A stretch of 64,000 bases of DNA from Botryllus schlosseri (taxonomy: Eukaryota), in assembly GCA_051294905.1 (NCBI GenBank), contig CM119373.1, positions 19,344,001-19,408,000 of the forward strand. Reading direction: 5' to 3'. Positions within the stretch are counted from its first letter, which is position 1. The number at the start of each line of letters is the position of its first letter. The translations under genes were made by a program, and so were the position numbers. Below are positions 5,861-45,705 of this stretch, piece after piece. The notes under the pieces are model-generated. The model worked only from the letters and a program-made list of their open reading frames with translations. It did no database searches and was not told where the DNA came from.

Positions 5861-7051
5861 CTTGTGATCATCAAATTGAATCAATTCTAGTATGATAGTT
5901 GAAATTTGCTTGATAAATCGGTTGCAATACAAACCAAGGATTCGTTTCATATTTCGGATTGGCGGCTTCTAGCATGATTTACCTCGGAATCATATTTTGC
6001 CTTTGTGACTTCAAACTTGCAGGGGTTCATGTATTGAAAGATTGAATCTCTCAATTTGAAATTTTATGCCGATGATTGTGTCTCCTCGAAGCTTGCCATG
6101 GTCATACCATTTTTACTATACTTCTAATTTCTTACAGCTGCTTTCATGCTTGACTATTTCGTTCATTTCATTTAATTGAACACAACCTAGTCCTATATGG
6201 TAATGAAGTCCCGGATTTTTTTTTCTGGATTTTCATACCTATGCTACTCAATCTTTTTTTTGCTTATTTTTGATGAGTTGCCACAATTTGTAGCCTTTCT
6301 ACATCAACCCTACCCTGAATGGAGTCAGGGACTGGACGCGTGTTAAAGTGTTGAGTACTGTTACTGGCTACTGGCAATATACTATTGGATATCCTCTGCT
6401 CCCAAGTGCATTATTTAGGTTCTCTCATGAGTACATTTCTTATTACCCACCTTCAACTTGTCTTGATTCCTTATTTGGCCTTAACGACTAGATTTACCAG
6501 CTTTGGTAATGCTCAAGTTTTATCAAGGAAAACAAAGTTTTTCGATGTGCTTGCATCTCTTTCATGATTGAAACTGAAAGTGTCATGACATCTGATAACT
6601 AAATATATTTTTGAAAATTGGTCCTATTTGTAGTGTGATTGGTCATTCTACATCAGTCGTGACGATACAATCTGCATTTTGAAAGTGGCCACTGTCGATT
6701 ACCTGCTGAAATTATGCAGCCATTGAAAAAATCTACTTTTGAAACAACTCCAGTAGCCTGCTTTTTGTACCTTGATTCTCTACTTCTACTTGCAGTACAA
6801 ATGACATGTTGAAATTGCTACTTCCAATTGTAATTGAGTAGAAGTTTTCGGCCATACTGGTACTTGAGGAGCAACACTTACTGCTTTTGCCACTACTGTA
6901 GATAATGACCTACATATACTGCGCTGCCAATGCCTTTCTACAGAACCTTCACTTTTTCTTCGCTTTGTTTTGACTGCTTGACTTTATAAGGTTGCAAATC
7001 TTTCTCAATTCAGAATCCCTAGTAAACAAAGTATTAGGTGTAATTTATACA

Positions 7052-7820
7052 ATGGTGTGCGTGCGTGGCAATGCGGAAGAGCATGCGATTAACATGTTAT
7101 CGGAACTGTGCAGAATGCAATGAGATCGTTGATTGATCGATCAAAGTCAAAAATTATGTATATTGCAGTCATTGAAGAGTAATGTCGGCGAGATCGGTAT
7201 ACATCCGAGACATGTTGGCAAAGAAACTCCGCACACCCTGGCGGCTAGATTTCGGAAAACTGGACTCAGAGTGTGTGAAAAGCTGCATCGATTTCATTTA
7301 TTCGGGCGAATTGGAAATCGCTGACAGAAAGATTGAAAACGTTCTGAAGATTGGTACTATTCTGCAGGTGGACGGGGTAAAACTACTCATAGCCGGGATT
7401 TTGGCCGAATCGTTGAATGTAACAAAACTACTTCTCGACGAGAAAGATGGCTGATTAGTATGGGCTGAAAGAAGTCTTGGTGAAATGCAAAAGAAAATCT
7501 CATGGAGATCGCGAACCGGCCTGAATTTGGCAGGACGGCAATAGCGGAAATCATTAATATTTGGCTGACAGAAGGGGAAAATTTAGCGGACACGACAAGC
7601 TGGTTGTACTTCTCAAGTGCGCCGAGAAAAACTCACCGGAAACTTATTAGTTGTCTGAACAGATACAGCGAATCAGGTTGGACTCTGTGCCACCGGTGTT
7701 TTTGAGAAATCTCCTTAAATCCCACCCTTTTGTTAGCAACGATTTTGCGACTTATAAGCTAATAAGCGATCACCTTCTTGAGATTCCGGAAAAACTCATT
7801 GAAGAAAATGAATCTTACAG
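7052..7820 (+). pseudogene. BTB-BACK exon 1 pseudogene, clade A
   Basis: ATG at 7052, TGA at codon 24 (7121-7123), several frameshifts (fragments in ORFs 7182-7454 and 7502-7705). Ends at the homologous donor AG|GTGATA. Confidence 0.85.
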
Positions 7821-7976
7821 GTGATATCTATTGCTTTGAAAAAATGCCAAGAAATTGTTTGTACTTGTAAGTTATATTCCGCATGTTTCCACATATCACC
7901 GTTTATTGCGTGGATATAGCGTTGAATGCTTCTGTGAACCATGTCATATAATGTAGTAGACCTATATATATATATA

Positions 7977-8884
7977 CCGTAATTTTCCATGTATAATGCG
8001 CAAAATTTTCACGATTTTTTGCCCTAAAATCTGGGGGTGCGTATTATACATGGGTACAACACGCTTGAAAAATATCTCCCTCAATAAAAAACTTGAAATC
8101 ACTCCTTTCTTCATGTTTGTTTCCAATCACTTTCAGCCATCGTGCCTAGTAATTCGTATTATCAGTGTTACGCGCTGCCAATCAGCGAGAAGCGTGTTAC
8201 CAATTAACGAGAAGCACAACAGGCGGTCTCCTGCTGAGTTAGTTTTCCGTTTGTACGCGAGCGAAATTAGGGCACGCAATCCTCGCTAATTCATTGCGTC
8301 AAAGACAGGCCTGAACAATCGCATATACAACAGGCCATGCGCGCAAGATATAATCGCTTGTGTAATCAGTCGCGTCTCTAAAAGACCTGGTGCGCACGAC
8401 ATAACCGTTGGCCTGGGCAATTGCATCTGTAATAGGCCTTGTGCTCATGATGTCGTGTCGCTGGCCTAAACTATCGCATCGCCGGCCTGCTGGCTTTGCT
8501 GCTATCTACTTTCGTTCAGAGACATTGCCGTTAATTGTATGATGATTAGCCATCGCATCTGTAATAGGCCTCATGCTCAAGATTTCGTGTCGCTTTCCTG
8601 AACTATCGCGTCACCAGCCTCGCAGGCTTTGGCTGCTATCTACCATCATTTAGAGACAGTGCCGTTAATTGCATAATGATTAGCGATGGTTATGTCATGA
8701 TTGTGGAACAGTGACATCGCAAAACAGAACAACATGTCGACATAGTATACTGAAACACAGCTATTCGTGTACTGCAAATGCAGGGTGCGTACTATACATG
8801 GGTACAGGCTTTTTCCCAGAATTTGCATGCCATTTTAAGGGTGCGTATTATACATGGGGGCGTACTATACTTGGAAAATTACGG
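7977..8884. mobile_element. Non-autonomous Tc1/mariner-superfamily (Tc2/pogo-like) element, 908 bp, in an intron
   Basis: 25-bp imperfect TIR starting CCGTAATTTTCCA and ending TGGAAAATTACGG. Flanked by TA runs on both sides. Subterminal GGGTGCGTATTATACATGGG repeats. Absent from the paralogous intron 3922-4380. Confidence 0.82.
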
Positions 8885-9154
8885 TATATATATATATAAA
8901 TTAATATGTGTGAAATAGAACTTCTCATCATGGCAAAAAATTCTATTTGAAGGCACTTCTTGTCCTCAATTGTCATACATACCATTCAAGAGTTATTTAG
9001 AACGCCGGTTTCCGACATCATCTTCGAACTCCTTTGCGTTTTTACCCAAATAGGGATAGCAGTTACTGCCCAAAAGAAAACTCAATTTTGCCCACTTGTA
9101 TGATTTTTAAACGTAAAAATATCAAATAATCCATCGTTGTTATTCAATAAACAG

Positions 9155-9732
9155 GAGTGGCGAAGAAACAACGTCACCGGATCAAGGGAACTCATCTGAC
9201 GTTGGGAATACATGCAATGACAACAACACACACTCACATGCAGTCGTCATAAAGGAAGAACAATTAGACACTTGCTTTACCTGCAAAACCCCATGTTCAA
9301 ACCTCGCACAATCAGCGACATGTCCCTAAAAGGAATGTACTTTCTGAGAATGACCCTCTCGTCACTGTTGTGATACCTTGTAAGCGTCTAAGGTCATATG
9401 CTCGAAAGTGTAGCACGGCAAAAGTTGCAAGATCTAATGAAAACTGCCCGAATATAGCTCTTACAGAAGCCCTTACGAATCTACTGGTTGATAAAAAACC
9501 CGACGATATTGCAATTGATCACGAAGGATTTGCTTATGTGGATGATATCCTGAAACACCGAAGATTACGAAGATTTTCTCTGTCAGAAAAAGACGTCTAT
9601 GATTTGGTGACAAATGGCATTGAGAGTCGCTTTGCAATCAAGGGCAAAGTCGGTAATTTTAAGATACAAGCGACCTGTAGTCATCCTGCCGATTCAGGAT
9701 CTGGTAGCGTGGACGAGGATCAATCGAATTAG
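9155..9732 (+). pseudogene. Tpt1 N-lobe exon 2 pseudogene
   Basis: Acceptor AATAAACAG|G at 9154/9155. A 2-nt deletion near 9272 (GACACTTGC versus GACACTTTTGC in the 4381 copy) shifts the frame; the distal part is ORF 9370-9732. Confidence 0.8.
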
Positions 9733-10901
9733 GATTGCAGAGTCACGGAAAGTGTGCCCGGTGGGCCTGAGATGGCTGATGCCTGATGTCTTGAGATTAA
9801 CCTCAGATATACCAGTGATGGTTACGCAGCTGATGATGTTACGAAAGTGGCCAACCATATGGACATGACTGTCAGGAATATTGTATAACATTAATCAGTG
9901 TCATTTTCAGGAAATTACTTCTTGTCAAAACGATCAATATCCCATTTCTCGACATTGTTGAAATGTGTGGATAATTATAGATAATTAACCTACGGATAGA
10001 TGGTAATTGAAACCCTGCATATTGATTTCTGAATTTTCATCCCATGCTACTTAAATCTTTTATTCCGATAAGATGCAACAATTTGTAGCATTTCTACGGA
10101 TAAAATTCATAACTGTATTTGAAACATCAACCCTATCCTGAATGTAGTCTAGAACTGGGTGCATGTTAAAATGTTGAGTACTGTTACTGTTTAATGGCAA
10201 GACACAATTCGGTATCCTGTGCGCCTAAGTATATTATTTAGCTTCCCTCAGAGTTCATTTCATATCACTCTCCTTCAAGTGGTCCTCATACTTATTGATA
10301 AGCCTCAAAGGAGTAGATTGACCAGCTTTGTTAATGCTCAATTTTTGTAGAGTGAAAAGCAGTTTTGGAATATGCTCGCATCACTTTTAAATATCGAAAC
10401 CGTCATAACAACTTGGAACATTGGCTCCTGTATCATGGTAACTAAATATATATGTGAAATTGAACCTGTTTTTAGTGTAATCGTTGATTTTGAATCCGTC
10501 GCTAAGAGGCACCCTGTACTTCTGATAGTGTTCACTACTTATTGGCTGCTAAACTTAGGCGGTTGTTGAACAAATCTAATTTTGAAACAACTCCAGTACT
10601 TTTCGGACGTATATTTTCTACTTCTAGGCTACTTCGAGTACCTTTGACATGTGTTTGAAATTACACTATTGCTTTCACTAGTAATTAAGTATAAGTTTAC
10701 GGCGTTACTTCCACTTCTACTTAAGTAGGAATGCTTTGACCGCCACTGTAGACATATAACCTACAGATACTGCACTGCCAACTTCTTTGTACAGAGCCTT
10801 CACTTTTACCCTAGTTTGTTTTTACTGGCCGTCTTTATAAGTTTGAAAATCTTTCCCATTCAGATTCCCTAGTAATCAAGGCGTTAGGCGTAATTTACGC
10901 G

Positions 10902-11683
10902 ATGGTGCGCGTGCGTGTCAACGCGGAAGAGCATGCTGTTCAAATGCTATCGGAACTACACAGAATGCAGCGAGATCGTGTTGGTTGTGACTTTCTGATC
11001 AAAGTCGAAAATGATGTGTATCACACTCACAGAAACGTGATGGCGTCGGGATCAGCGTTCATACGAGGCATGTTGGCAAAGAAAAGTCACTTTCCTTCGC
11101 TTTCTTTTAAAAATGGTGACTCTGAATGCATCAAGAACTGCATTGATTTTATTTATTCGGGCGAATTAGAAATCCCGGATGGTAAGATTTCAATCATTCT
11201 GGAGATCGTAGATAAGCTGCAGATGGAAGGGGTAAAGCAAATCATTGCCGGAATTTTGGCCAAATCGTTGACTGTGGAAAACTACTTCTTGACGAGTACT
11301 ATGGCAGACCATTACAGGTTGGAAGAAGTGACTGTGAAATGTCAAAGCTTTATCAAAGAAAATCTCATCGAGATCGCAAACCGTCCCCAGTTCCTAAGGA
11401 TGTCAATTGTGGAAGTCATTCGTCTTATGACGGAAGGGGGGAAATTTACCGAACACGACAAGCTGATCATACTACTCAAGTGGGCTGAGAAAAATCCGCT
11501 AGTTACATGTGCTTTGCTTAATCAGATTCAACAAATCCGGTTGGACTGCGTGCCTCCATTGTTTTTGAGAAATCTCCTTAAATCCCACCCGATTGTCAGT
11601 AAGAATTTAGCTATTTACAAGCTGATAAGCAATCACCTTCTCGAAACTCCAGAGAAAGTCACCGAAGCTATTGCATGCGGCAG
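10902..11683 (+). CDS. BTB-BACK coding exon 1, clade A
   Basis: Open frame from ATG 10902, close paralog of 3140 with the same 782-nt length to the donor AG|GTGAGT (phase 2). Confidence 0.88.
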
Positions 11684-11884
11684 GTGAGTGCAACAATCTT
11701 CTCAGAGCAATGTTCTACACCTTGAACAGAGATTGTCCAAGATTTTTTTACATCCAAGTTCTTTGAATGAGTCTGTGTATTCTGATAGTTCAAAACTTTC
11801 ACCCTTTATTATGCGAGAACAGTAATGCCGCCGTTAACTGTGTTACAAAAATAGCTGGCTCGTGGTACAGAACTTGAGTATAGC

Positions 11885-12147
11885 TTTCAATACAATATCC
11901 ATTGTATAATAATATTTATTAACTCGAAGACTTTTCGGGTGCCTCTTTTCAAGAGTTAACGGCACACTAAAGGGATTTAAACAAATTTCATGGTTTGTGA
12001 TTTTGATTGTTGCGTCATACTTTGCCTTTTTGGTTTTGCTTTTAAATCTGTTTAAATCCTTTTAGAGTGCCGTTAACTCTTGAATAGAGGCACCCGAAAA
12101 GTCTTCGAGTTGATAAATATTATTATACAGTGGATATTGTATTGAAA
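11885..12147. repeat. Long inverted repeat (arms about 105 bp, loop about 55 bp) in an intron
   Basis: TTTCAATACAATATCC...GGGATTTAAACA mirrored by TGTTTAAATCC...GGATATTGTATTGAAA with few mismatches. Confidence 0.85.
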
Positions 12148-12752
12148 AAAATGTGTTACAAAAGTTTATTAATATTAATCGAAGCTGGAAAAAAACTCAA
12201 ATTAACACCAGGTTATTTCCAACAGTCTGTTAATGGCAAGGCTTTGTAGCAGGCGAATATGATAAATTCCTCGAGCTCCAGAGCATTCTTTTATGAAAAA
12301 ATAGTTCCAGCTCAATAGCGATGCTCTGCTGTCACATCCCCAGCAGTGGCAGAGTGGGTACAATTCCTAATTTTGAGAATGGTTGTTGATGAATAATTTC
12401 AATTTTGCCGATAGTAGAAATAGCAGGAGTAGGAGTAGCATAGCATCTTATGAAACACATTAGGGCAGGATCTATTTCTTACACAACTGGCCCCAGCTTC
12501 AGTAGAATTTCATTAAGAGCCGCTGCCTTGGCTACATTCAAAATGCACTGCTCCATGTTACAGCTATGTATCAAAAGCCCTGGTTGGTGGTATAACTTCA
12601 GAGCCTTTTCTAGTTTCTACCCATTTGCGAGTCACATAAGGTCAGTAGGTACAGCGCCTTGCCAGATGAAACTAAGCATTCGATATGCCCACTTACATAT
12701 TTCTGAGACATAAAAATATCAACCAAATCCATCATTGTTTTTCAATAAACAG

Positions 12753-13371
12753 GAGTGACAAAGAGATGAAGTCACTAGATCAAGGGAACTCATCTGACGT
12801 TGGGAATACATGCAATGAAAACAAGGCACAATCGCATGCAGTCGTCATAAAGGAAGAACAATTAAACAATTTTGCTTTACCTGTAATACCGAATATCCAA
12901 ACCTTGCACCATCGGTTGCATGTCCCTAAACGGGATGTGCTTTCCGAGAATAACAGACTCGTCACTGTTGCGATACCTTTTAAGCGTCAATGGTCATATG
13001 CTCAAAAGTGTAACACGCCAAAAGTTGCAAGATTAAATGAAAACTGCCCGAACAAAGCTCTTACGGAAGCCCTGACGAATCTACTGGTAAATAAAACGCC
13101 TGATGATATTGCGATCGATCACGAAGGATTTGCTTATGTGAAAGATATCCTGAAACACCGAAGATTCCAAAGATTTTCCTTGTCAGAAAAGGATGTCTAT
13201 GATTTGGTGAAGAATGACAAAGGTAGTTGCTTTGCAATCAAGGGCGAGTTCGGTAATTTTAAGATTCAAGCGACCTGTGGTCATCCTGATTCGCAAAGCG
13301 ATAACATGAACGAGGATGGATCGGATTCGAACTCAGAGTCACAGAAAGTGTGTCCGGTAGGCCTGAGATGA
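12753..13371 (+). CDS. Coding exon 2: linker plus truncated Tpt1 N-lobe; predicted 466-aa fusion with 10902-11683
   Basis: Acceptor AATAAACAG|G at 12752/12753, phase 2, in frame with ORF 12685-13371. Paralog of exon 4381-4945. Confidence 0.75.
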
Positions 13372-14408
13372 CTGAGGCCTGGCATGGGTTATAGCTCCCG
13401 TGGACAAGGTTTTGATTTGATTTTCCAGTTATGCCTTCCCCAGTCATGCGAATCACTCCTTGATGCTAGCAGGATTGTCTGACTTGGCATGATAAATGGG
13501 GCTCGAGCTGCAAATAGAATGGTATGGATTCACTTCCAATCTGGGCAAGTTCCGGCATGCCGAATTCTGATTGACAGCTACTAGCAGGATTTAACGCTCA
13601 ATGCCGATGACTTTTACACCTCAAAGCTCACCGTGGTTACTGGCGGTAGCATTTTTTGGTAATGCTTCATTTTTTAGATCGATGCATTTAGCTGCTTTGA
13701 TGTTTGGATATTTTGTACATCGCTTGATCAATTGATCATGCTATCTGAATGCTCATTTCTGCTGAGTAAGGATTTGAAGTTTTTGCCTGTAGCCTACTTT
13801 GCAGTTTGGCTGGTATTTCTTTCAATCATAATTGAAGACAACATTATTAAACACTTGGCCTACTGTGCTTATTGCCCCGTAGTCGATAGCAATGTCGCAG
13901 ATATTAATTTCTGAACTTGCAGTGCTGTGGTTACCAATGCTACTCAGTGATTTTTTTGCTGATAAGTTTCGACAATTTGGTGTATTTTTAGAGGCAATAT
14001 TCAGCACTGTTTTTTTAACCATCATCAACACTGTCATGAATAAGTCAGGAGTTATGTGCATGTTGAAATGTTGAGTTCTATTGCAGGTTACTTTCAACAC
14101 ACTGTTTGTTATCCCTCGTGTCAATGTACTTTATCCAGCCTATCTTATTACTACATTTCATATCATTGCCCTTAAAGTTGTCTTGATACCATGATACCAT
14201 ACTTGTTACCATACTTTGTAACTGGCTGCCTATTGCTGCTAAGGCTCGTGATGATATTAGAAGGTACAAAGTACTGCCAGTAAGCATGAAGAATTGCTAT
14301 GTCCTTATTAACCCAGTTTCTTTACAAATGCAATGTCAATTTTTATAACTGTGTGAATACATTTCTTTCCAGTGTGACTAGAACTCAAACTATCCCGTGT
14401 AATTTTAA

Positions 14409-15205
14409 ATGATGGTGCGCGCTGCCTGTGTCAATGTCGAGGAACATGCTACAAAAATGCTGTCGGAGTTACGCATGATGAGACAACATCACGACCAATG
14501 TGATTTCGTGATCAAAGTCGAGAATGACGAGTACCACACTCACAAAAATGTAATGGCTGCGGGCTCAGAATATTTTCGAGCCATGTTAGCTCACGACACT
14601 AAAGAAAGCCAAGATGGTCAAATCACTTTTAAAGATGTGGATTCCGGCTGTGTGAAAAACTGTATCGATTTCATTTACTCCGGAGAATTTGAAATACCGG
14701 ACGGGAAGATTAAAGACCTGCTTCACATCGGAATCATGCTGCAGTTGGAGGGAGTAAAACAAGTCATATCTGGAATATTGGCCGAATCGATTAACGCAGA
14801 AAATTATCATTCGACGACAAGTATCGCTGATATGTATGAGCTGCATGACGTGTCATCGAAATGCCAACGTTTTTTCATAGAGAATCTTACGGAAATCGCG
14901 AACCAGCCAGAATTCGGAAATATGGCGATATCCGAACTCGTTGATATTTTAAAAACGGATGACTTGGAATATTCGGAAGAAGAGAAACTGACCATACTGT
15001 TGAAGTGGGCCGAGAATAATCCGAAAGAAAACGATGCCTTGCTCAACGCGATCAAACGACTCGATCTGGTGAAAATACCGTCTCCGTTTTTGAGAAATCT
15101 TCTCAAAACCAACCCGGTCATCAGCAACGACTTCATGATATACAAGCTGATAAGTGATCATCTGCTTGAGGAAAAAGCCGTTATGGTCACGCCTATTCAT
15201 GACAG
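14409..15205 (+). CDS. BTB-BACK coding exon 1, clade B
   Basis: CDFVIKVENDEYHTHKNVMAAGSEYFRAML and CIDFIYSGEF motifs, BACK region. Donor AG|GTATGT at 15205/15206, phase 2. Confidence 0.9.
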
Positions 15206-16114
15206 GTATGTGTATGTGTGACTACTATGGCCGTCCGCAACGATTTGAGTACTCAAGTATGGGCTGGGTAAAGATTCTAGTGGTGACAGTGGTTTCTCGA
15301 ATAACGAAAATATATGCCGTCATTCCAAGAATAATCAATGAAAAATATAGTTTCAATGATACAAATACTCACGGGAATAGCATCTCTTGTCATAAAGCTT
15401 CACAAAACGGAAATGAAAAATTATTTTGGATTACATGTAACCTTGCTCCTTATAGTGCATAAATGTATATTTGAACTTCTTGAAACAATACTACATCATA
15501 ATATGCTCGAATGCGCGACTAGACTTGAAGCTTAATACTCGATTCGTAATCAAACCACCCAGTTACTTGATTTTGCCCAGCCCAGCCCTCAAAAAGTATA
15601 TCCTATTCCGAGTGTAGAGTATTGAAGTGGGGATAGACTTGGAAATGCTCAAATATGTACGTTTCAACTACCACAAAGTAAATGATGCCAGTTATACTTG
15701 ATCCTGACTTATTTTTAAATTACTGACATCAGTTGGTCACTGCAGTTCGGTCACAACTACGCATATCGGTTTTATCTATGTGGGTAGTAGAATTGTGCTT
15801 TGAATATTATAGGGCTGCATATTGAGGTTCAAAGGCTCCCTCGGTCGTAAGAAATTTTCCTATCAACATATTCGTTCAGAATAAAATTCAGGCCATACCA
15901 TATCAGTACTCAAAAACATTAAGTCTCAATACTAGACTCAAATCATCAAAAGTGATAATTGAATTTTAGTATTTGAGTACTGAAATCATTATTCCCGAGC
16001 CTCCTCATTGATATTAAATAATGTAATCGGTCTGGCACCCTACCAACATGATTTTGATCAGCCTTAGCAGTCTAAGCGCACATAAATTAAAATCTTGTCC
16101 TTTATGATTAACAG

Positions 16115-16931
16115 GCAAAACATGGCATCAAAATCGGAAGTGGTAGAGAAATCATTCGATGCAAACGGAACGCTATCACATGCCATAGTCAAATACGAGC
16201 AGCAAGCAATCGCCACCGGATTTGCACCAAACCAGGGTCGAAGCACGTCCAGTCGGTGTTACGAAAGGCCGCGAGATCTTGAGAGCCGCGACAGTGGATC
16301 GAATATCGCCTTCTCAAAAGCGCTAGTGACCCTGCTCAGACATAAGAAGCCACGCAGTATCCCGGTAGATGCAGCGGGTTACGCGTTTGTGAAGCAAATC
16401 TTGAGAAGTCCTCAATTTCGAAAGTTCAACTTGACAGAGCGTGGAGTTTACGATATCGCAATGGATGACGGTAAAAACCGCTTTGAAATTGAAGGCGCGG
16501 TTGGCGTTAACTTCAGAATACGTGCAACGCAAGGTCATTCGTTCAAAATCGAACCGGAAGCTTTTGGACTGCGTTTAATCGAGGACCCTCACGAATATCC
16601 TGTGGTTGTCCATGGGACATACCTACAACACCTACGCGCCATAAAAAGAGACGGATTGAAATGCATGAAAAGAGCTTACATTCATTTCGCCATTGGCCTT
16701 ATCGGCGAAACGTGCGTGACCAGTGGCATGCGGGACACCTGTGACATAGTCATCGTTATCGACATGCCAAAAGCCATGAGAGACGGCTTGAAGTTTTATT
16801 TGTCCCAGAACGAAGCCGTACTCAGTGATGGCGTGTGTGGTGTCGTTTCTCCAAAGTACTTCAAAGCTATCAAGAAGTATGACTCTAAAACGAATCGGTT
16901 CGAGGAAATTGACTTTGTGTTTCAAGCATAG
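16115..16931 (+). CDS. TRPT1-like: Coding exon 2: full-length tRNA 2'-phosphotransferase (Tpt1/TRPT1/KptA) domain; predicted 537-aa BTB-BACK-Tpt1 fusion
   Basis: Motifs SKALVTLLRH, KNRF, IRATQGHS, VVHGT, MKRAYIHFA, SGMR, SQNEAVLSDG, PKYF match the TRPT1 family in order. Acceptor GATTAACAG|G at 16114/16115, phase 2. An internal ATG at 16122 would also allow a stand-alone product. Confidence 0.9.
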
Positions 16932-18737
16932 CTTTGTCCGTCATACGTCACGAGTAGCACCCAACCAATATATTAAGCCAATATACCAAAAATATAATAT
17001 CTGGCTCAAGGCGCGTTTTCAAAACTTTGAGAGCATATATTTGAACAGCTCCAACTCCCTACTGTCATTTTGTGGTGTCACAGTAATTGCCGAAATTTTT
17101 TTGCCTAATTGCTAATACCGATATTGCTTTCAAAGTGTGATATTGACTCTATATTATCAGTGAGCCAATAAACGTTCGGACTCCTGTCAATATTATTTGC
17201 CTGCAATGATCTTCAAATTTGCAGCTTTTTCACTTTCAAATTCTGCCAAGCGCTTCTCATATTGTAACATATTATAACTGGAGTGTCGGCAGATAAGCCG
17301 CTGTTGCTGATCTCCAGTCGAGAAGGGCCAAAATATTGCGAAGATCACTGAAATATGCATATGCTGACTTATCACATGATTATTTTCCACGCCAATTTAT
17401 TTAATCTATTCTTAGTGATTCCTAGTGAATGGGTTGGCTTCTGCGTCTCATTACTGGCAAGATTTTTATTTTCGAAATTGCGGTTCTTCCTGCTTTACTC
17501 TAGATTAGAGAAACCGATATTTGTATAAAACACAATATTCTGATATTTACGGTATGTGGAACAGGCCTGTACAAAGAATTGCAATTTAACAGACCAGTGT
17601 GTCTTATGCCATGTTCTCTGAATCTCACCAAGATAATATATAGGCCTAATCAACTGTACTTGTGAGAGCGATTTAAACCGACACACTATCAACCATTATA
17701 ACACTCAATTGCAGCTTCATAACTATTATGGAAGATATATCAGTCTAAACCTGAAAAGAGTTGATTTAATATCTTCCTGTCCAAATCCCTAATTAGTTTC
17801 GTATCATATGTATTCAGTTAAAGTGCTTCTGAAACTTCTTGCAATACTTGCAATACTAGTTAATCCAACTCCATGCTCATGACTGGTACATTCCCGCATA
17901 TCTTCAATGAAAAGGCATATGTTGTCAGTGAATAGCACTTTCATTCTTCAACTATTTTAGTGTTTGTATATATTGTATGTTTCTATGTACCTTATAGTTT
18001 TATAATCAGTAGTCTGCATTCCATTTGATACTAATTGATTCCAAAATATACTGAATTTCTTTATTGTGTAACCAAGCACTAAAATTTACAGAGATTGTTG
18101 ATGCATGGTATGAATTGAGATTGTCGATAATGAATTTCTTATATGTATGATTACTTAACTAAGTTTGCCTCTGCGGAGTGGCATTCGACTGATCAAGACT
18201 GACTGTTTCAATTTTAGAAGGTAGATCAAATGCTTTTGGATGTTATAACATTGTTCTTGTACATTTGGTTAAGTTATATCATCGAAATCAACTGTTTAAA
18301 AATAAATAACTACCTATTTCGAATTTTAGAACTGTTTTCTAGGCAGGATAACGATGCCTTTTTGGTTGTGAATTAGTCGTATAGCAAGAATATTGCAGTA
18401 TGCTTACTCCACCTTAAAATACTTCACTCACGCCATACCTTATCTGGGTACAAGGAATAAAATATGCATGTTTATAGTTTTTAACCATATTTTGTCAGCA
18501 TATTCCGATTTTATCAGGCTGAGCAGATTTTATATTTTCAAATCCGGTTGTAAATGACAGTTAGTCAAAAGTACTGTAATGTGAAAATTGGAAATGTTGA
18601 ATATTTTTACATCCAAATTCAGTTTCAAAAGAGTTTTTGATCCAACCCATATCGAATTTGTGAACAGCCATATTGTATATACTTTTCTTTTCAGAATCAC
18701 TAGTCTAGAAAACAAACCATTGCTTGTAATTTAAGCG

Positions 18738-19487
18738 ATGGTGCATTGTGCCGGTGTCAATGTCGGAGAACATGCCGCTAAAATCCTGTCGGAACTACAC
18801 AGGATGAGGCAACACCATGACCATTGTGATTTCGTGATCAAAGTCGAAAATGACGAGTATGGCACTCATAAAAATGTTCTGGCAGCTGGCTCCGAGTATT
18901 TTCGAGTCTTGTTGGCTCACGACACGAATGAGCGCCGAGATGAGCAAATCACTTTTGAAGATGCGGATGCTGAGTGTGTGAAAAAGTGCATCGATTTTAT
19001 TTACTCTGGTGAATTTTAAGTCCCTGATGGGAAGATTAGAGATCTGCTTGACATTGGAATTATGCTGCAGTTGGACGGAGTAAAGCAAATCATATCTTGA
19101 AGTTTGGTCACATCGATTAACGTAGAAAACTATCATTCGACCACAAATATCGCAGACATGTAGGCTTACGAGCTAGTGGATGTGTCATTGAAACGCCAAT
19201 GTTTTTTCAAAGACAATCTCATGGAAATCGCAAACCAACCCGAAATCACAAACCCTGACGTATGGCGTTATCTAAACTCATGGATATTTTGAATATGGAC
19301 AGAGAAAAATCCGATAGGAAACAACGTTTTGCTGGACTCTATCAAACAAATCAGCCTGGAACGTGTGTCGTCTACGTTTTTGAGAAACCTTCTCGAAACC
19401 CATCCGGTTATCATGAACGACTCCACGGTATACAAGCTATCATCTCTTTGAGGAAAAAGTTGTCCAATTCGCGGCTAATCATGACAG
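18738..19487 (+). pseudogene. BTB-BACK exon 1 pseudogene, clade B
   Basis: In-frame stops TAA 19017-19019 and TGA 19098-19100, further indels. Retains donor AG|GTATGT. Confidence 0.85.
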
Positions 19488-20151
19488 GTATGTGTGACAA
19501 TCGGGGATGATTACTACTGGGGCTGTGCCTAACGATTCGAGTGTCGTGATTTCTTCGAGTCACAATAATATACGCCTTCACGCCAGTAAGATTTATCAAC
19601 GAAAAATGTAGTTTTAATGCATCTTTACCGCAGTCGAGCCTCGAAACATCAGTTAGCTGTATCTCAGCATCAAAAATCATTTCATATTCATAGAATATAT
19701 CTGGTCACGATGCCTTAGAACTTGTAATAGACTTAAGAGGTGTTACAATATGTACCGTTCAAACTACGGCAAAGTAAATAATGCCAGTTCTCCTTCATAA
19801 TGAATTGTCCTGAATTTATGGACCTTAATAGGTCACTGCAGCGTCTATGAACGTGGGTAACCTCGTGCTCCATGATTTGAATGATATGCTGTCTTGTACT
19901 GAGGTTTAAACGTTACCACAGTCGGAAGAAATATGATATAATGTAATATATTATAGAGTGTCGTGTGTAATATCGGTACTTGAAACATCGGCTCACGTAA
20001 ATGAGTCGAAGCATAAAAAAAAACTCGATTCCGATTCGAGTACTACCAGCCGAATTGGTCGTGCAGTCGATTTTGCCCAGCCTGATTTTGATCAGCCTTT
20101 ACAGTTTCCACGGATGTAGATTCAATTCCTGTCATCTTTTATTATCAACAG

Positions 20152-20972
20152 GCGAAATAAGGCATCAAAATCTGAAGCCGAAAAGAAATCACATGTTGCA
20201 ACCAGTATGCTATCACATGCCGTAGTCCAAAGCAAGCAACAAGCAGCCACCGCCTGTTTTTCAGCTAACCAGGGACGAAGCACGTCCGGTCAAAGTTACA
20301 GAAGGCCGCAAGATCTCAACTGCCGCTATAAAGGATCAACTATAATATACCGGTAGCACAGCGGGTTACGTGTTCGTGGAGCAAATCTTCAGAAGCCCCT
20401 GATTTCTAAGTACAACTTGACACGATCCTAAAAACCGCTTTGAGATTAAATGCGCAATCTTTGAAAATTTTCAACTTCGTGTGACCGAGTCTCATTCATT
20501 CATAATCGAGCCAGAAGCTTTAGGACTGCGTTTGATCGAGAACCATCATGAATTTCCATTAGGTGTTCACCTGCCCTACCATAAACGCCTGCCGGCCATA
20601 AAGCGAGATGCGTTGAAATGCATGAACAAAGCAATTTACATTTATTTCAAAATTGGCTTCATGGGAGAAACCCTCAATACCGGCGGCATAAGCAATAACC
20701 ATGGCGTAGTCATCGTACCGGATATGCCGAAAGCTATGAGAGATGGTTTGAAATTCTATGTGTTGCCAAACGAAGCAGTACTCAGCGATGGCGTATGTGG
20801 TGTCATTTCACGCAAATTCTTCAATGCTATCAAGAAATACCATTATAAAACTAATCGGTTTGAGGAAATTGACTTTGCCGTTTCTGCATTTTGTAACCAA
20901 GCACTGAAATTTTTACTGATATTGATATTGATGATGCATAGTGGAGTACTTCCCATATGTATGATTACTTGA
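20152..20972 (+). pseudogene. Tpt1 exon 2 pseudogene with internal deletions
   Basis: Acceptor at 20151/20152. Relative to the 30462 copy it has deletions near 20345 (removing the R-H helix) and near 20428. The C-lobe remnant is ORF 20481-20972. Confidence 0.85.
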
Positions 20973-21590
20973 TAACGGGGCGTCTACCGAGTGTCCAGTC
21001 CATCCTGCTAAAGCGCTTTTCAATTTCCTAATATTTCTCTCCTGCATTTGGAGTAGGTAAATCATCATAATATACTCTTTTCGAATTTTGAAACTGTCTT
21101 CTGGGCAGGATAATAATTCCTTTTGGTTGCTGATTAGTCTAATACTAAAATTGTAGTACTCCACCTTCAAATATTTCGCTCATTGCATGCTCTCTCTGGG
21201 TGTAAAGCATTAAATATGCATGTATATAGTTTGTAATCATATTTAGTCAGCAAAGTCCGATTTTCTCAGGCTGAGCGAATTTGACATTTCTATCTAAGCC
21301 CGAAGTACATCTAAAATAAATTTCGAATCATTCCCGAATCCAAGACCAACTGCGGTTGTGACTGACATTTACGCAAAAGTAATGTGAAAATTATAAATGC
21401 CGAAAATTTCTGAATCCAAATCCAGTTAAACGAATGAATTTTTAACCCAAATTATGCTAATCTCCAATCAACTTACTAAATGTTGTGTAAAGCCTCTTGG
21501 TGGTATTGATTTTCAGTAAAAAATTCAACAGTACCGTAAACCGGGGAACAATTTTTGACAAATTCGCTTTATATCTTGTAAAGGCTAGAG

Positions 21591-23163
21591 CAGAGGTCTC
21601 AAACACGCGGCTCGCGGGCCGCATGCGGCCCGTCAGAACATTTGGTGCGGCCTGCGAAGGCATTTAGTAATTTCAAGTATTCGACAATATATTCAAGTGT
21701 CATATATCCTTTTTAGATTTAAGAACTTGAAGTTAACTCTAAAACTATACTACAAAAACCTGAAATATAAACAAACTTCACAATCACATCACTTCTAAAA
21801 TCTACCATGCGATGGAAGATCGCTATTACGTCACATTTCAGGTTCATGATGATAAAACATGACCCGTTGATGATTCGTGACTGAAAATTGTGATTTTGTT
21901 TGGTGCGACCTTTCGTCAAATTACTCGATTTTGCATTGACTGGGTGATAAACTAAAAATGACTCGAGTTGAGTCCGGCCAAACGTTCAAATCAGAGAAGG
22001 ACTTGCGTCTCGGAATAGTGACTTGGTCGTCCTACGGACGCAACTATCTATGAAACTGTCGTGGGGAATAGTAATTTATCAAAAGCCCGTAGTGTGCGTT
22101 GCGTAGGGTATATAGATATCGAATCAGGTCTGTCTGGAAACCATTGGAATTCTGTGGCCCCCGTGACGTTTCATTGGTTACATCCTGGGTGTTGTTTGTC
22201 CTCTTTATCCATGTTATTATCGGTGGCGAGTAAGGTAGTGGTACGCTCCACAGCTGTAACACCAATGGATTCTTCGGCGATTGGTCATTTCTATTCCAGG
22301 GGTTCTTAACCAAGGGTCCGTAGCCCCTTCGTGGTACGAAGCACCCCATCAGGGGGAACGAGACGCATTGCGGAAATAGGCCTATATGCTGTGAAATATT
22401 TTCTAGGTCAATTTATTCAACTGGAAAATATTCTTCGCGCTACGCGCGATTTTATGTGGATTGGCTTTCTGATTTTTATATAGGTACCATCAGAAATGGT
22501 GTTGAAAATAGACAGGGGCACGGGAAATCTTATTGAAAGCACAAGGGGTACGATCGCTAAAACAGTTACGAAACAATGGTATTACATGGAACAATAATGA
22601 TTATATTTACGTTGTCATTGATCTGTTCAAATATTAATCGAAGAAAATCTAACGCTGGTTTAATTTGACTTTGGCAATAACAGCAACAATAGCAACAATA
22701 GCCCATACTTATCACGACTATATCAAAAACCCCGATTAGGCAACACCGCTTACATGCTCTGATATCAGATCAATCTTTAGTAAATTCTAAAATATACTAC
22801 ATAAAATTGTGGCACATCAAAGGTCCACTATAGCTGCAATATTATAACCCGACAGATTTGACGATGTCATCATGCGTCCTCGCGCATGATGTCTATAACT
22901 CATTATTTTAAAAAATTATGCCCGGCATAAAAACTATATTATTCATATATTTGAAAATGTGATTTTTTTCGTGCCAAGCGTGAATAATATAATAGTAAAT
23001 TACATTTTCACGATGTTTGTGGAATGCCTGTCTGCAAGGTGCCGTCAAATAATGCCTACTACGATATGATACATTGAATACCTCTATTATTGATGTTGCG
23101 GCCCGCGGCGTCATCAAAAATTAGGAAATTGGCCCGCGAGCACATTTGAGTTTGAGACCTCTG
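21591..23163. mobile_element. Non-autonomous hAT (Charlie-like) element, 1573 bp
   Basis: TIR CAGAGGTCTCAAAC ... GTTTGAGACCTCTG; exact 8-bp TSD GGCTAGAG. Empty paralogous site near 31989 (GGCTGGAG present once). Confidence 0.92.
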
Positions 23164-23857
23164 GGCTAGAGTATATAGGGGTGGCAAGTTTTGTGTTTTT
23201 CTGGGGTTATGGAGCAAAGATTAGAATTAAGTAATCCAAAATCTTCATGATCATACATAGGCCTAAGTACTGTATTTTTGTGAATTATCTGTGTCCAAAG
23301 TTACCCCGGCATATGGGGGACTTTGGATAATGTAACTTTTTGTATGTCTTTACACTTTGATGAGAGCAGTAGGTAAAAATGAAAAGAAATAGTATACGTC
23401 TGGCCTATTGCAGGATTTTTACCTAATCCCCCCCCCAAAAAAAATATTTTTTTTTTAAATTAGGTTATTTAGGAAGGCTAATGCCACCTTATCCATCCCC
23501 TATCTCAATTCCCATCATGTCTTCCCCAATTGAGACTTGAAAATAACATATGGTGACAAGATTATCCCACTGGCGGCGTCAGCAAACATTAAGCTTGTTA
23601 CCATGATTTATTGCTGTCGTTGCTGATATCAAATATTTTACCGTTCTTTAAAATATGCACTTTTCCTTTCCTATGTCGTTTGATGAATATATTTTGTGGT
23701 AATTTATGCCACATTCAGTAGGCGCATCTTCAAGAGCATTTGATAAGTTTTTAAAGTAGTTTCCGCCCGCTTACAATCTCTCGGCTGATTGCCTAATGAA
23801 TAATCATTGCAGACTCAGCTGGAATTATCATTAATATATTACGTATAATTTCTAAAG

Positions 23858-24687
23858 ATGGCACAGGCTGTGCGTGTCAATGTATCCGAACATGCGGCGA
23901 AAATACTGTCGGAATTGCACCGAATGCGGCAAGGCTGTAATCATTGTGATTTCATGATTAAAGTTGGAAATGATGTCTATCGTGCCCACAAAAATGTTTT
24001 GTGTGCGGGCTCGGAGTATTTCCGAGCCATGCTTGAGCATGACACCAAAGAGAGTCGGGACGGAGTGATCACCTTTAAAGATGTGGATTCCGAATGTGTG
24101 AAGAACTGTATTGACTTCATTTACTCTGGTGAATTTGAAATCCCGAATGGAAAGATGAAGGAACTTCTACATATAGGAATCATGTTGCAATTGGATGGAG
24201 TAAAAACAGCCACAGCGGAAATTCTATCGGAATCGATAAATGTGGAAAATTACTATTGGACGGCAAATATCGCAGATATGTACGAACTGGCAGATGTCTC
24301 GACGACATGCCAGCAATTTTTCAAAGAAAACCTCATGGAAATCGCTAATCAGCCCGAATTTGAAAATATGCCGCTGTCCAGACTTGACGATTTTCTGTTA
24401 TCTGATGATTCCAAATATTCAGGAGAAGAAAAACTGACCATATATCTCCGGTGGGGTGAGAAAAACCCCAAAAGGAACAGCAATTTACTCGAATCACTTC
24501 GACATTTCAAGTTGGAAACAGTCTCGTCCACGTTTTTGATAAATCTTCTCAAAACCAACCCAGTTGTGAGCAATGACTTGATGATATACAAGTTCCTCAA
24601 TATTCACCTGATCGAGAATTTGGAAAAAAAGATCAAAACTAACGAAGGAGCAACCAGTCAGGAACCCACACCAATTTCTATGAATAG
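23858..24687 (+). CDS. BTB-BACK coding exon 1, clade C
   Basis: Open frame with BTB and BACK motifs, 830 nt from ATG to the donor AG|GTAAGT (phase 2). Confidence 0.9.
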
Positions 24688-25034
24688 GTAAGTTGGATTA
24701 AAATTTCAATCCTCTTCTGAGAATCGGCACAACCGAGTTTCATCCCTAATTGGTTATTGAGGACGATCAACTTAATATTTGATCTTGTCAGTGTTTCTGA
24801 CGCATGATTGTTATCAACTAATCAATGTTTGGTCTGTTTTGCGTATACTGTACATATATATTGTCGTCATATTTCCTAGTTCACTATATAATTAAATAAT
24901 AATATTATGTTTTAGCTAATAATATGAATTTGATATGTTGCGGCCCACGAATGGACTCAGATGTAGAATACAGCCCTTGAGCCGAAAAGTTTTATCATTC
25001 CTGGTCTAATCCATTCTCTTTGTTTGTTAAATAG

Positions 25035-25452
25035 CGGGAATACAGGAGATGATATGAAAGTTGAAGATAAGCCTTCCAGGCCAGGATCCCCATATGTGAG
25101 AAACACACAACAGCCACGTAAACCTCGGCACCAACTTATGAATCAGTCCCCACCTTTAGTTTTCGACTCACTTTTACTTTTCGACCCACCTGCCCGCTTA
25201 TTTAACGACCCAAGTTTGCCAACAGCACGTTTTCCGAGTGCATCTCCTAGAGGTACGCGAAGTTCATATCACCTCCCAATTCCGTCACCAAATATTCCGA
25301 GTGGTAGAGGCAGAGGCAGAGGTAGAGGTAGAGGTACGCCAAGTGGATCATTTCCCCAGGATCTATATTGTTCACCCGGTGGATCTGGTGAAGATACCGG
25401 GGTTGTGGAGGTGAATTACTGTATCAGCGACTCCTCTGATTCTGACTACTGA
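25035..25452 (+). CDS. Coding exon 2: Pro/Ser-rich tail with (RG)5; predicted 415-aa product with 23858-24687
   Basis: Acceptor TTTGTTTGTTAAATAG|C at 25034/25035, phase 2, in frame with ORF 25024-25452. A paralogous exon at 37299 is also open. Confidence 0.68.
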
Positions 25453-37112: not shown

Positions 37113-37298
37113 CTGTACATGTGTATGATCGTCATATTTCCTAGTTCACTATGTAATTAAAAATTATATTATGTTTTGACTAATAATATGAATTTGATAT
37201 GTTGCAGCCCACGAATGGATTCAGATGTTTAATTCGGCCCTTGAGCGGAATACTTTTATCAATCCTGGTCTAATCCATTCTCTTTGTTTGTTAAATAG

Positions 37299-45667: not shown

Positions 45668-45705
45668 GTAAGCACAAAAAAATCTTTTAAATGGATACCA
45701 TAGGA

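What the first reader, a model, noticed from the sequence alone, without database searches (positions are those of the whole stretch)
14409..16931. Predicted BTB-BACK-Tpt1/KptA fusion: a KLHL-type adaptor with an intact RNA 2'-phosphotransferase/ADP-ribosyltransferase in place of Kelch repeats
Seen in sequence: the BTB-BACK frame ends GAC AG|GTATGT (15205), and a 909-nt GT-AG intron leads to AACAG|G CAA (16115). Both junctions are phase 2, giving a 537-aa frame. The second exon keeps LLRH, KNRF, RATQGHS, HGT and MKRAYIHF. Established: these motifs hold the Tpt1 Arg-His-Arg-Arg catalytic set and NAD+ site; TRPT1/KptA enzymes remove 2'-phosphates from RNA and can ADP-ribosylate phosphorylated RNA/DNA ends in vitro; BTB-BACK proteins dimerise and act as CUL3 adaptors. 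Inference: this would couple sensing or modification of nucleic-acid ends to ubiquitin ligation, possibly in RNA quality control or innate defence. I do not know of this architecture being described, but could not search.
Basis: partly seen in the sequence, partly recalled or inferred. Interest (0 to 1): 0.9.

Follow-up and report, generated by a model that had tools for sequence, protein, structure and literature searches.

The report
Ubiquitin-ligase adaptor fused to Tpt1 enzyme
A sea-squirt gene really does splice a BTB-BACK module, the part that normally docks proteins to the CUL3 ubiquitin ligase, onto a complete and apparently active RNA 2'-phosphotransferase/ADP-ribosyltransferase (Tpt1); I found this pairing in no database or paper searched, and it hints at a link between marks on nucleic-acid ends and ubiquitin.

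Summary
Window 14409-15205 encodes BTB+BACK and 16115-16931 encodes a complete Tpt1/KptA domain. The predicted GT-AG splice (15205|16115, 909 nt) appears in assembled contigs of two RNA runs from different studies. It gives a 537-aa open frame.

The Tpt1 part keeps the Arg-His-Arg-Arg catalytic residues and the HGT NAD+ motif. Its model matches mouse and human TRPT1 (TM 0.86/0.83). Its dN/dS against sister copies is 0.2-0.3, against about 0.9 for the linker.

The gene is one unit of a + strand tandem array of 13 BTB-BACK units that fills the window. All intact first exons end in the same phase-2 donor. Second exons differ by clade:
- full Tpt1: this gene plus three pseudogenes;
- Tpt1 N-lobe only, with the catalytic Arg-His lost: two intact copies, one shown to be spliced and expressed;
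- disordered RG-rich or Ser/Gly/Phe-rich tails.

I found no BTB-Tpt1 protein in two very large protein searches and no paper describing one.

CUL3 binding, enzyme activity and biological role are inferred, not shown. The CUL3-plug residue is Thr, not hydrophobic. The same scan noted this array and its disarmed clade on this same window. I rate it a new variant of known kinds, interest about 0.6.

The parts
14409..15205 (+). Exon 1 coding part: Met1 to the first two bases of codon 266 (BTB-BACK)
   Evidence: An ORF runs from ATG 14409. Pfam finds BTB at aa 23-125 and BACK at aa 137-230. The best solved relatives are KBTBD2 (1.8e-23) and KLHL3 BTB-BACK (1.8e-22). dN/dS against intact paralogues is 0.10-0.20.
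14598..14606 (+). Thr64-Lys65-Glu66, at the position of the CUL3-contact phi-x-E motif in the BTB alpha3-beta4 loop
   Evidence: It aligns to Leu-Ser-Glu of KBTBD2. In KLHL11 the motif is Phe130-Ser131-Glu132 (PMC3597819). It is kept as T-K/M-E in clades B and C and deleted in clade A.
15206..16114 (+). 909-nt GT-AG intron, phase 2
   Evidence: Contigs of runs X1 and X2 skip it, and no contig covers it. Splice-site sequences were read.
16115..16931 (+). Exon 2 coding part: last base of codon 266, a linker, the Tpt1 domain and stop TAG 16929-16931
   Evidence: It is in frame with exon 1. Contigs of X1 and X2 cover 16111-16938.
16116..16301 (+). Disordered linker, about aa 267-328
   Evidence: pLDDT is about 50 over model residues 1-55. 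Identity to P0001 is 57%, against 86% in the domain. dN/dS is 0.8-1.0.
16302..16832 (+). Tpt1/KptA (PTS_2-RNA) domain, both lobes
   Evidence: Pfam scores 2.6e-45 over the full profile. Human TRPT1 7yw3 scores 2.1e-31. In the AF2 model nearly all 10-residue blocks from residue 61 on have mean pLDDT of 93 or more (three dip to 78-84), and TM to 7yw2 is 0.86. dN/dS is 0.20-0.29.
16338..16343 (+). Catalytic Arg341-His342 (LLRH)
   Evidence: These align to yeast R23-H24 and human R40-H41 (PMC10415124). The columns are invariant in 49 Tpt1 sequences.
16479..16481 (+). Catalytic Arg388 (KNRF)
   Evidence: It aligns to yeast R71 and human R86. The column is invariant.
16611..16619 (+). His432-Gly433-Thr434, the NAD+ adenosine-ribose motif
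   Evidence: It aligns to human H130-G-T132. H and G are invariant and T is nearly so.
16671..16673 (+). Catalytic and NAD+-binding Arg452 (MKRAYIHF)
   Evidence: It aligns to yeast R138 and human R150. The column is invariant.
1630..61358 (+). Tandem array of 13 BTB-BACK units. u1 1630 (pseudogene), u2 3140, u3 7056 (pseudogene), u4 10902, u5 14409 (this gene), u6 18738 (pseudogene), u7 23858, u8 29032 (pseudogene), u9 32690, u10 38699 (pseudogene), u11 44838, u12 55077 (stops), u13 60507
   Evidence: The map comes from tblastn with stop counts and Pfam. The exon-1 tree gives three well-supported clades that match exon-2 type. Phase-2 donors and matching acceptors are conserved.
10902..13371 (+). 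Unit u4 (clade A): BTB-BACK exon (to 11683) spliced to exon 2 (from 12753), which encodes only the Tpt1 N-lobe with Arg-His replaced by Val-Asn. It is expressed, with a 3' UTR reaching about 14330-14348
   Evidence: X2 contig record 9 holds 628 letters between its two laid pieces. That equals 81 nt (11603-11683) plus 547 nt (12753-13299). The residue changes are seen.

Best explanation
**What it is.** This is a real, expressed two-exon gene of a tunicate. It encodes a 537-aa protein: a BTB dimerisation domain, a BACK domain, a disordered linker of about 60 aa, and a complete two-lobe Tpt1/KptA domain.

**Context.** It is the only intact full-Tpt1 member of a tandem array that evolves by birth and death. 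In that array one conserved BTB-BACK first exon is spliced in phase 2 to exchangeable second exons.

**How it most likely works (inferred).** The BTB domain makes a homodimer, so two Tpt1 domains are presented side by side. Each Tpt1 domain binds a phosphate-bearing nucleic-acid site, either an internal 2'-PO4 or a 5'-PO4 end. It then uses NAD+ to remove or ADP-ribosylate that phosphate, as TRPT1 does. The BTB/3-box surface probably docks CUL3. Proteins on the marked RNA or DNA, or the enzyme itself, would then come under ubiquitin control.

**My odds.**
- Gene and architecture are real: about 0.9.
- The Tpt1 domain is catalytically competent: about 0.65.
- CUL3 is engaged: about 0.45.
- The whole chain is true: about 0.3.
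For: - **Splice.** The joint is in contigs of two RNA runs, the intron is uncovered, and the frame is open for 537 aa.
- **Domains.** Pfam finds BTB, BACK and full PTS_2-RNA.
- **Active site.** The tetrad R341/H342/R388/R452, HGT, QGHS and SGMR are kept. They sit in columns that are invariant or nearly so across 49 family members. Their roles are taken from PMC10415124.
- **Fold.** The model is confident and matches mouse and human TRPT1 at TM 0.86/0.83.
- **Selection.** The Tpt1 domain has dN/dS 0.20-0.29 against about 0.9 for the adjacent linker, in comparisons with sister copies. The nearest database relative, P0001, is 86% identical in the domain and 57% in the linker.
- **One gene, not two.** The exon-1 tree matches exon-2 type, so the two exons duplicated together. 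The same donor and acceptor are conserved in all intact units. The paralogue u4 uses them in RNA.
- **BTB-BACK kinship.** The closest solved relatives are CUL3 adaptors: KBTBD2 and KLHL3.
Against: - No contig covers the first 400 nt of exon 1, so a full-length mRNA is not shown.
- Expression looks low, with contig depth of 3-8. Raw reads of two further runs gave almost nothing usable.
- The CUL3 plug residue is Thr64, not Phe, Met or Leu.
- Three of the four full-Tpt1 copies in the array are pseudogenes.
- Differences between the window and the RNA contigs in the coding sequence are 9 non-synonymous to 6 synonymous. That is not clearly constrained.
- No enzymatic, CUL3-binding or phenotypic data exist.
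Confidence: 0.75

Rival explanations
1. Dimeric enzyme with no ubiquitin link. BTB-BACK serves only to dimerise, localise or stabilise an active Tpt1, and CUL3 is not engaged.
For: The hydrophobic CUL3 plug is replaced by Thr64 (PMC3597819). Many BTB proteins do not bind CUL3 (general knowledge). The Tpt1 domain is intact and constrained.
Against: The BTB-BACK exon is closest to bona fide CUL3 adaptors over BTB, 3-box and BACK. It is itself under strong purifying selection, with dN/dS 0.1-0.3. The Glu of the motif is kept in clades B and C.
Confidence: 0.3
2. Tpt1 acts as a binding module only. The domain works as the substrate receptor in place of Kelch. It recognises phosphorylated RNA ends, NAD+/ADP-ribose or a protein partner, and catalysis is irrelevant.
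For: Clade A paralogues keep only the N-terminal RNA-binding lobe, with Arg-His changed to Val-Asn/Asp. They still stay open, spliced and expressed. Other paralogues carry RG-rich tails of the kind that bind RNA (the RNA-binding role of RG motifs is general knowledge).
Against: Every catalytic and NAD+-site residue is retained in the focal gene and in P0001. dN/dS of the whole domain is low. A binding-only role would not need the tetrad.
Confidence: 0.2
3. There are two separate products. The main Tpt1 protein starts at ATG 16122 from a promoter of its own, and the spliced form is a minor read-through.
For: ATG 16122 lies 8 nt into exon 2. The database relative P0001 was called as a 269-aa ORF starting at the same Met, probably because it was called on unspliced genomic DNA.
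Against: Contigs in two runs cross the junction and none covers the intron. The phase-2 donor and acceptor are conserved across the whole family. Exon 1 and exon 2 co-duplicate.
Confidence: 0.08
4. This is a decaying lineage-specific duplicate with no lasting function. It is still open by chance within a birth-and-death array.
For: Three sister copies are pseudogenes. Differences from the RNA contigs are 9 non-synonymous to 6 synonymous. Expression is low.
Against: The 537-codon frame is open. The Tpt1 domain has dN/dS 0.2-0.3 while the linker is about neutral. All invariant family residues are kept. The gene is transcribed and correctly spliced.
Confidence: 0.1

Closest known systems
TRPT1 / Tpt1 / KptA (NAD+-dependent RNA 2'-phosphotransferase and nucleic-acid 5'-phosphate ADP-ribosyltransferase; PDB 7yw3, 7yw2, 7yw4)
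   Same: It has the full two-lobe domain and the Arg-His-Arg-Arg tetrad. It keeps HGT, QGHS and SGMR, and the Ser-Lys pair used for substrate binding. HMMER scores 2.1e-31 and the model matches the human and mouse structures at TM 0.83-0.86.
   Different: It is preceded by BTB-BACK and a disordered linker, whereas canonical enzymes stand alone. Its nearest relatives are not canonical TRPT1. They are a tunicate stand-alone 'TRPT1-like' group with a Lys-rich disordered N-terminus (P0002; P0151 from Styela clava).
KLHL / KBTBD BTB-BACK-Kelch CUL3 substrate adaptors (KBTBD2, KLHL3, KLHL11)
   Same: The BTB and BACK domains are in the same order and spacing. The best solved matches are KBTBD2 (1.8e-23) and KLHL3 (1.8e-22). 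The Glu of the phi-x-E loop is kept.
   Different: There are no Kelch repeats; an enzyme domain sits in their place. The phi residue is Thr, not Phe, Met or Leu. CUL3 binding is untested.
BTB-BACK proteins with non-Kelch C-termini, such as BTBD6 (BTB-BACK-PHR; bioRxiv 10.1101/575910, listed)
   Same: They show that the BTB-BACK chassis can carry a different C-terminal module.
   Different: The known modules are protein-binding domains, not NAD+-using nucleic-acid enzymes.
Fission-yeast Tpt1-Yae1 fusion (PMC12810181, listed)
   Same: It is a natural fusion of a Tpt1 domain to an unrelated module in one polypeptide.
   Different: The partner, order and lineage all differ, and it has no ubiquitin-system domain.
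DELTEX E3 ligases acting on ADP-ribosylated nucleic acids (PMC10810221) and PARP9-DTX3L
   Same: They work alike in concept: ADP-ribose marks on nucleic acids or proteins are coupled to ubiquitin ligation.
   Different: They are unrelated proteins (RING-DTC, not BTB/CUL3). In them writer and ligase are separate polypeptides, and no homology exists.
TRIM5-CypA (TRIMCyp) type domain capture (from my own knowledge, not tested)
   Same: An E3-associated scaffold replaces its recognition domain with a captured single-exon domain, inside a fast-evolving gene cluster.
   Different: The scaffold and captured domain differ. A retroposition origin is not shown here, and no antiviral role is shown.

Membership tests
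Tpt1/KptA (Pfam PF01885, PTS_2-RNA) | Profile match above the curated cut-off over the whole domain | tested here: met
   155.1 bits against a cut-off of 26, profile 3-177 of 177.
Tpt1/KptA (Pfam PF01885, PTS_2-RNA) | Catalytic tetrad Arg-His-Arg-Arg (yeast R23, H24, R71, R138) | tested here: met
   R341, H342, R388 and R452 align to the tetrad. The columns are invariant in 49 sequences. Roles are from PMC10415124.
Tpt1/KptA (Pfam PF01885, PTS_2-RNA) | NAD+-site motifs (HGT; Asn near the C-terminus; SGMR) | tested here: met
   H432-G-T434, S469-G-M-R472 and N498 are present.
Tpt1/KptA (Pfam PF01885, PTS_2-RNA) | Two-lobe fold (winged-helix N-lobe plus ADP-ribosyltransferase-like C-lobe) | tested here: met
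   In the AF2 model nearly all 10-residue blocks of the domain have mean pLDDT of 93 or more (three dip to 78-84). Foldseek's top hits are 7yw2 and 7yw3 at TM 0.86 and 0.83.
Tpt1/KptA (Pfam PF01885, PTS_2-RNA) | NAD+-dependent 2'-phosphate removal or 5'-phosphate ADP-ribosylation | not testable with these tools
   This needs recombinant protein or yeast tpt1-delta complementation.
BTB-BACK CUL3 adaptors (KLHL/KBTBD type) | BTB domain followed by BACK domain | tested here: met
   BTB 6.5e-26 and BACK 5.8e-13; KBTBD2 and KLHL3 are the best solved matches.
BTB-BACK CUL3 adaptors (KLHL/KBTBD type) | C-terminal Kelch beta-propeller | tested here: not met
   There is no Kelch match. The C-terminus is a linker plus Tpt1. 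It is therefore not a KLHL/KBTBD member in the strict sense.
BTB-BACK CUL3 adaptors (KLHL/KBTBD type) | phi-x-E CUL3 contact in the alpha3-beta4 loop | tested here: inconclusive
   The motif is Thr64-Lys65-Glu66. Glu is kept, and the hydrophobic plug (KLHL11 F130, SPOP M233) is Thr.
BTB-BACK CUL3 adaptors (KLHL/KBTBD type) | 3-box hydrophobic groove that takes the CUL3 N-terminal extension | not tested
   The region aligns to KBTBD2 and KLHL3, but I did not model or score the groove.
BTB-BACK CUL3 adaptors (KLHL/KBTBD type) | Physical binding to CUL3 and support of ubiquitylation | not testable with these tools
   This needs pull-down or ITC with the cognate CUL3 and an in vitro ubiquitylation assay.

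The most novel reading that the evidence does not exclude
The array is a host conflict locus. A CUL3-adaptor chassis captured a single-exon Tpt1 domain from the tunicate stand-alone TRPT1-like gene, or from the Tpt1-tailed retroelements that other notes report in this genome. The dimeric protein would recognise or ADP-ribosylate phosphorylated ends of foreign or retroelement RNA/DNA. It would then direct CUL3 ubiquitylation of the attached proteins, or even of the ADP-ribose mark itself. On this reading the catalytically dead N-lobe copies and the RG-tailed copies are decoys or alternative sensors. That would be a natural 'Rosetta stone' linking animal TRPT1 to ubiquitin signalling.
Probability: 0.12. 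Interest if true: 0.85.

Novelty: new variant of a known kind. Interest (0 to 1): 0.6.

Why it matters
What Tpt1/TRPT1 does in animals is unsettled. Tpt1 is inessential in the bacterial and mammalian taxa tested (abstract of PMC6333775, listed), and animals lack the fungal-type tRNA ligase pathway that makes it essential in yeast (my own knowledge). The enzyme can also cap phosphorylated RNA and DNA ends with ADP-ribose (PMC6182162, PMC10415124).

A natural, expressed and selectively constrained fusion of an intact Tpt1 to a CUL3-adaptor-type module gives a concrete, testable idea: nucleic-acid phosphate or ADP-ribose marks may be read out through ubiquitin ligation. This fits recent findings that DELTEX ligases ubiquitylate ADP-ribose on nucleic acids (PMC10810221).

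The surrounding array is also a compact natural experiment in swapping the recognition module of an E3 adaptor. It holds full enzyme, dead half-enzyme and disordered RG tails. If CUL3 is not engaged, the gene remains an unusual obligate-dimer Tpt1.

Tried and rejected
1. **Unit u1 as a retrocopy.** I first read u1 (ORF 1951-2535, with BACK and the Tpt1 N-lobe in one frame) as an intronless retrocopy that would prove the fusion. Alignment to the spliced u4 mRNA shows a genomic deletion from mid-BACK to mid-exon 2. It is not a clean exon-exon junction, so I rejected this.
2. **BTB-BACK exon against the 5.8-billion-protein set.** This found nothing at E<=1e-15 (threshold too strict) and nothing at E<=1e-3. 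Even the window's own ORF is absent, so this genome's proteins are not in that set. The blank says little about other tunicates.
3. **Length limits of that tool.** They exclude 537-aa candidates when the query is one exon. I worked round this by querying with the 346-aa relative P0002 restricted to its Tpt1 region. None of the 27 hits has BTB.
4. **Multi-domain hits.** I scanned 20 hits of the 1.84-billion-representative search with Pfam. Partners were extra Tpt1 copies, Yippee, RNase_T and MPLKIP, never BTB. P0142, and hits below rank 150, were not scanned.
5. **P0001's contig.** The DNA could not be fetched because the file is too large. There is therefore no dN/dS against the nearest relative.
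6. **Raw reads.** Run X16 gave 10 partial reads and X20 gave none, so there are no read-level junction counts.
7. **tRNA and Rfam scans** of the window were empty.
8. **Full-length model.** I did not fold the full 537-aa protein, because a spliced sequence has no reference and I did not paste it.
Full report

Yes. Window 14409-15203 translates to a 265-aa stretch with Pfam BTB (6.5e-26, aa 23-125) and BACK (5.8e-13, aa 137-230). Window 16122-16928 gives a full-length PTS_2-RNA (Tpt1/KptA) match at 2.6e-45, covering profile positions 3-177 of 177.

The BTB-BACK frame runs into GACAG|GTATGT at 15205/15206. A pyrimidine-rich acceptor ttatgattaacag|G ends at 16114. Joining 14409-15205 to 16115-16931 gives 1614 nt, which is 537 codons plus TAG with no internal stop.

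**2. Is the splice used?**

I laid contigs of two RNA runs from different studies (X1 from 2015, X2 from 2021) and raw reads of two others on 13300-17800.

- Both contig sets hold a joint '15201 to 16111, skips 909, GT..AG (cut +4)'. That is 15205|16115 exactly.
- X2 record 10 runs 14829-15201 and then 16111-16162.
- No contig covers the intron, and exon 2 is covered to 16938.
- The contigs differ from the window by about 3-4%. This fits alleles of a very polymorphic animal, although a very close paralogue cannot be excluded.
- No listed contig covers 14357-14810. The RNA therefore links BACK to Tpt1 but does not show the whole mRNA. The raw-read runs gave almost nothing.

**3. The enzyme part**

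HMMER against solved structures puts human and mouse TRPT1 first (7yw3 at 2.1e-31, 7yw2 at 1.4e-30), then yeast Tpt1 (7yw4).

In those alignments LLRH, KNRF and MKRAYIHF supply the counterparts of yeast R23-H24, R71 and R138. PMC10415124 describes these as the residues essential for 2'-phosphotransferase activity. [quoted passage not shown] Other functional residues are also present:
- the HGT pair that binds the adenosine ribose (H432, T434);
- the Ser-Lys substrate-binding pair;
- QGHS and SGMR.

In an alignment of 49 family members all of these fall in invariant or nearly invariant columns.

An AlphaFold2 model built on that alignment has mean pLDDT of 93 or more in nearly all 10-residue blocks from residue 61 to 271 (three blocks dip to 78-84), and a disordered first 55 residues. 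Foldseek returns mouse and human TRPT1 at TM 0.86 and 0.83.

**4. Selection**

Against the three sister copies in the window:
- the Tpt1 domain has dN/dS 0.20-0.29;
- the linker has 0.8-1.0;
- exon 1 has about 0.3.

These values hold even though the sisters are now pseudogenes.

Exon 1 against intact paralogues gives 0.10-0.27. The nearest database protein, P0001 (80% identical), is 86% identical in the domain and 57% in the linker.

The 15 listed coding differences between the window and the RNA contigs split 9 non-synonymous to 6 synonymous. That is too few to decide anything.

**5. The context changes the picture**

The whole window is a + strand tandem array of 13 BTB-BACK units.

- All intact first exons end in the same phase-2 donor, YAG|GTRAGT, just before their stop.
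- Each putative second exon has a phase-matched acceptor of the form aaYAG|G.
- A maximum-likelihood tree of exon-1 DNA gives three well-supported clades that coincide with second-exon type.

| Clade | Units | Second exon |
|---|---|---|
| A | u1-u4 | Only the Tpt1 N-lobe. Arg-His is Val-Asn or Val-Asp and the frame stops after 'GHP' |
| B | u5 (this gene); u6, u8, u10 | Full Tpt1. u6, u8 and u10 have stops and frameshifts in both exons |
| C | u7, u9; u11, u12 | Pro-rich tail ending in an RG repeat (u7, u9); long Ser/Gly/Phe-rich repeat (u11, u12) |

The exons have therefore duplicated together as single genes.

Unit u4 gives independent RNA support. X2 contig record 9 is its mRNA, because the loose end matches 11531-11560. 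The 628 letters between its two laid pieces equal 81 nt to the donor at 11683 plus 547 nt from the acceptor at 12753.

Unit u1, which looks intronless, is a deletion derivative and not a retrocopy.

**6. The BTB-BACK part**

The best solved relatives are CUL3 adaptors: KBTBD2 (1.8e-23), KLHL3 BTB-BACK (1.8e-22), then KLHL11 and gigaxonin.

The alpha3-beta4 loop motif inserts a hydrophobic residue into CUL3. In KLHL11 it is Phe130-Ser131-Glu132, and in SPOP the plug is Met233 (PMC3597819). It reads Leu-Ser-Glu in KBTBD2 and Thr64-Lys65-Glu66 here. Clade A has a 3-residue deletion there.

CUL3 binding is therefore plausible but weakened on paper. I did not test the 3-box groove.

**7. Is the architecture known?**

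- A phmmer search of 1.84 billion cluster representatives with exon 2 returned 3749 hits. After P0001, the closest are stand-alone proteins with a Lys-rich disordered N-terminus: P0002 (59%) and P0004 (46%).
- I Pfam-scanned 20 of the top hits, which covers every listed hit except P0142 that has enough N-terminal sequence ahead of the Tpt1 match to hold BTB-BACK. None has BTB.
- A word-based search of 5.8 billion proteins, seeded with P0002's Tpt1 region and admitting 190-605 aa, gave 27 hits, none with BTB. The nearest named one is 'tRNA 2'-phosphotransferase 1-like' of Styela clava.
- Homology to P0002 extends upstream of the Tpt1 domain into the linker. This points to that stand-alone tunicate gene as the donor of exon 2.
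- Searches with the BTB-BACK exon found nothing, and the window's own proteins are not in that set.
- Full-text searches found no paper that mentions BTB together with Tpt1, KptA or TRPT1 in this sense.

Absence from these sets is not proof. Unannotated tunicate genomes are not covered.

**8. Leads from the scan's own notes (unchecked by me except where stated)**

- The genome is called a sea squirt in those notes.
- It also has a long RWD-DUF504-2H-Tpt1 gene and retroelements whose Pol ends in Tpt1.
- The same window was noted for 'exchangeable phase-2 tails' and for a 'doubly disarmed clade A'. My searches agree with both.
- The focal gene is therefore probably not the animal's only Tpt1. 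A link to the Tpt1-bearing retroelements is an open and attractive possibility that I could not test.

**9. Mechanism**

Shown:
- a spliced mRNA joins BACK to an intact, constrained Tpt1 domain;
- the array has the structure described above.

Inferred:
- BTB dimerisation presents two Tpt1 domains;
- each domain carries out NAD+-dependent attack on a 2'- or 5'-phosphate of RNA or DNA;
- BTB/3-box recruits CUL3, so that proteins on the marked nucleic acid, or the enzyme itself, are ubiquitylated.

The family pattern (full enzyme, dead RNA-binding lobe, RG tails) suggests that the common theme of the second exon is nucleic-acid binding. This keeps a binding-only role for Tpt1 alive as a rival.

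**10. Verdict**

This is a new combination of two known modules in a lineage-specific, fast-turnover gene family. I rate interest at 0.6.

Noticed in passing
window 10902-14348: Unit u4 (BTB-BACK plus a catalytically dead Tpt1 N-lobe) is transcribed and spliced 11683|12753. Its 3' UTR is about 960 nt and runs to about 14330-14348, only some 60-80 nt before the focal ATG. Its contig depth (10-17) is higher than that of the focal gene (3-8).
   Followed up: partly
window 14355-14408: A strong acceptor-like site (catttctttccag|) ends at 14372, 36 nt upstream of ATG 14409 and right after the upstream gene's 3' UTR. In tunicates this layout would fit spliced-leader trans-splicing or an operon-like pair. 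I did not test it, because no read-laying runs were left.
   Followed up: no
window 25035-25449 and 37299-37680: The second exons of units u7 and u9 encode Pro-rich disordered tails ending in (RG)n repeats. They have no Pfam match and dN/dS is about 0.67. Whether they are spliced to their BTB-BACK exons was inferred only from phase-matched sites.
   Followed up: partly
window 47755-49243 (and 56491-56833): This is a long repeat-built ORF of about 490 aa behind unit u11. It is made of Ser/Gly/Phe-rich units of roughly 35 aa (...SSSGVPSKGKASG.GFVFSSSFGAPGKD...). ORFs are open in two other frames as well, and there is no Pfam match.
   Followed up: no
window 41919-42560: A single-ORF gene of 214 aa with a mitochondrial ribosomal L51/S25/CI-B8 domain (7.3e-11) sits inside the array between units u10 and u11.
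   Followed up: no
window 1630-2535: Unit u1 has an internal deletion from mid-BACK to mid-exon 2. It removes the intron and leaves BACK and the Tpt1 N-lobe in one frame, so it mimics an intronless fusion. It also has 3 stops upstream.
   Followed up: yes
window 17115-17158: Several RNA contigs touch only about 30-45 nt here and run on into unrelated sequence on both sides. One has depth 41.6. This is probably a short repeat or mobile-element fragment in the focal gene's 3' flank. The X1 contig covering the end of exon 2 also departs from the window after 16938, into 162 letters that are not found anywhere in the window.
   Followed up: partly
window 60507-61358: Unit u13 is the most divergent BTB-BACK exon (45-47% identity) and is intact, with the same phase-2 donor at 61337. 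I could not identify its second exon before the window ends.
   Followed up: no
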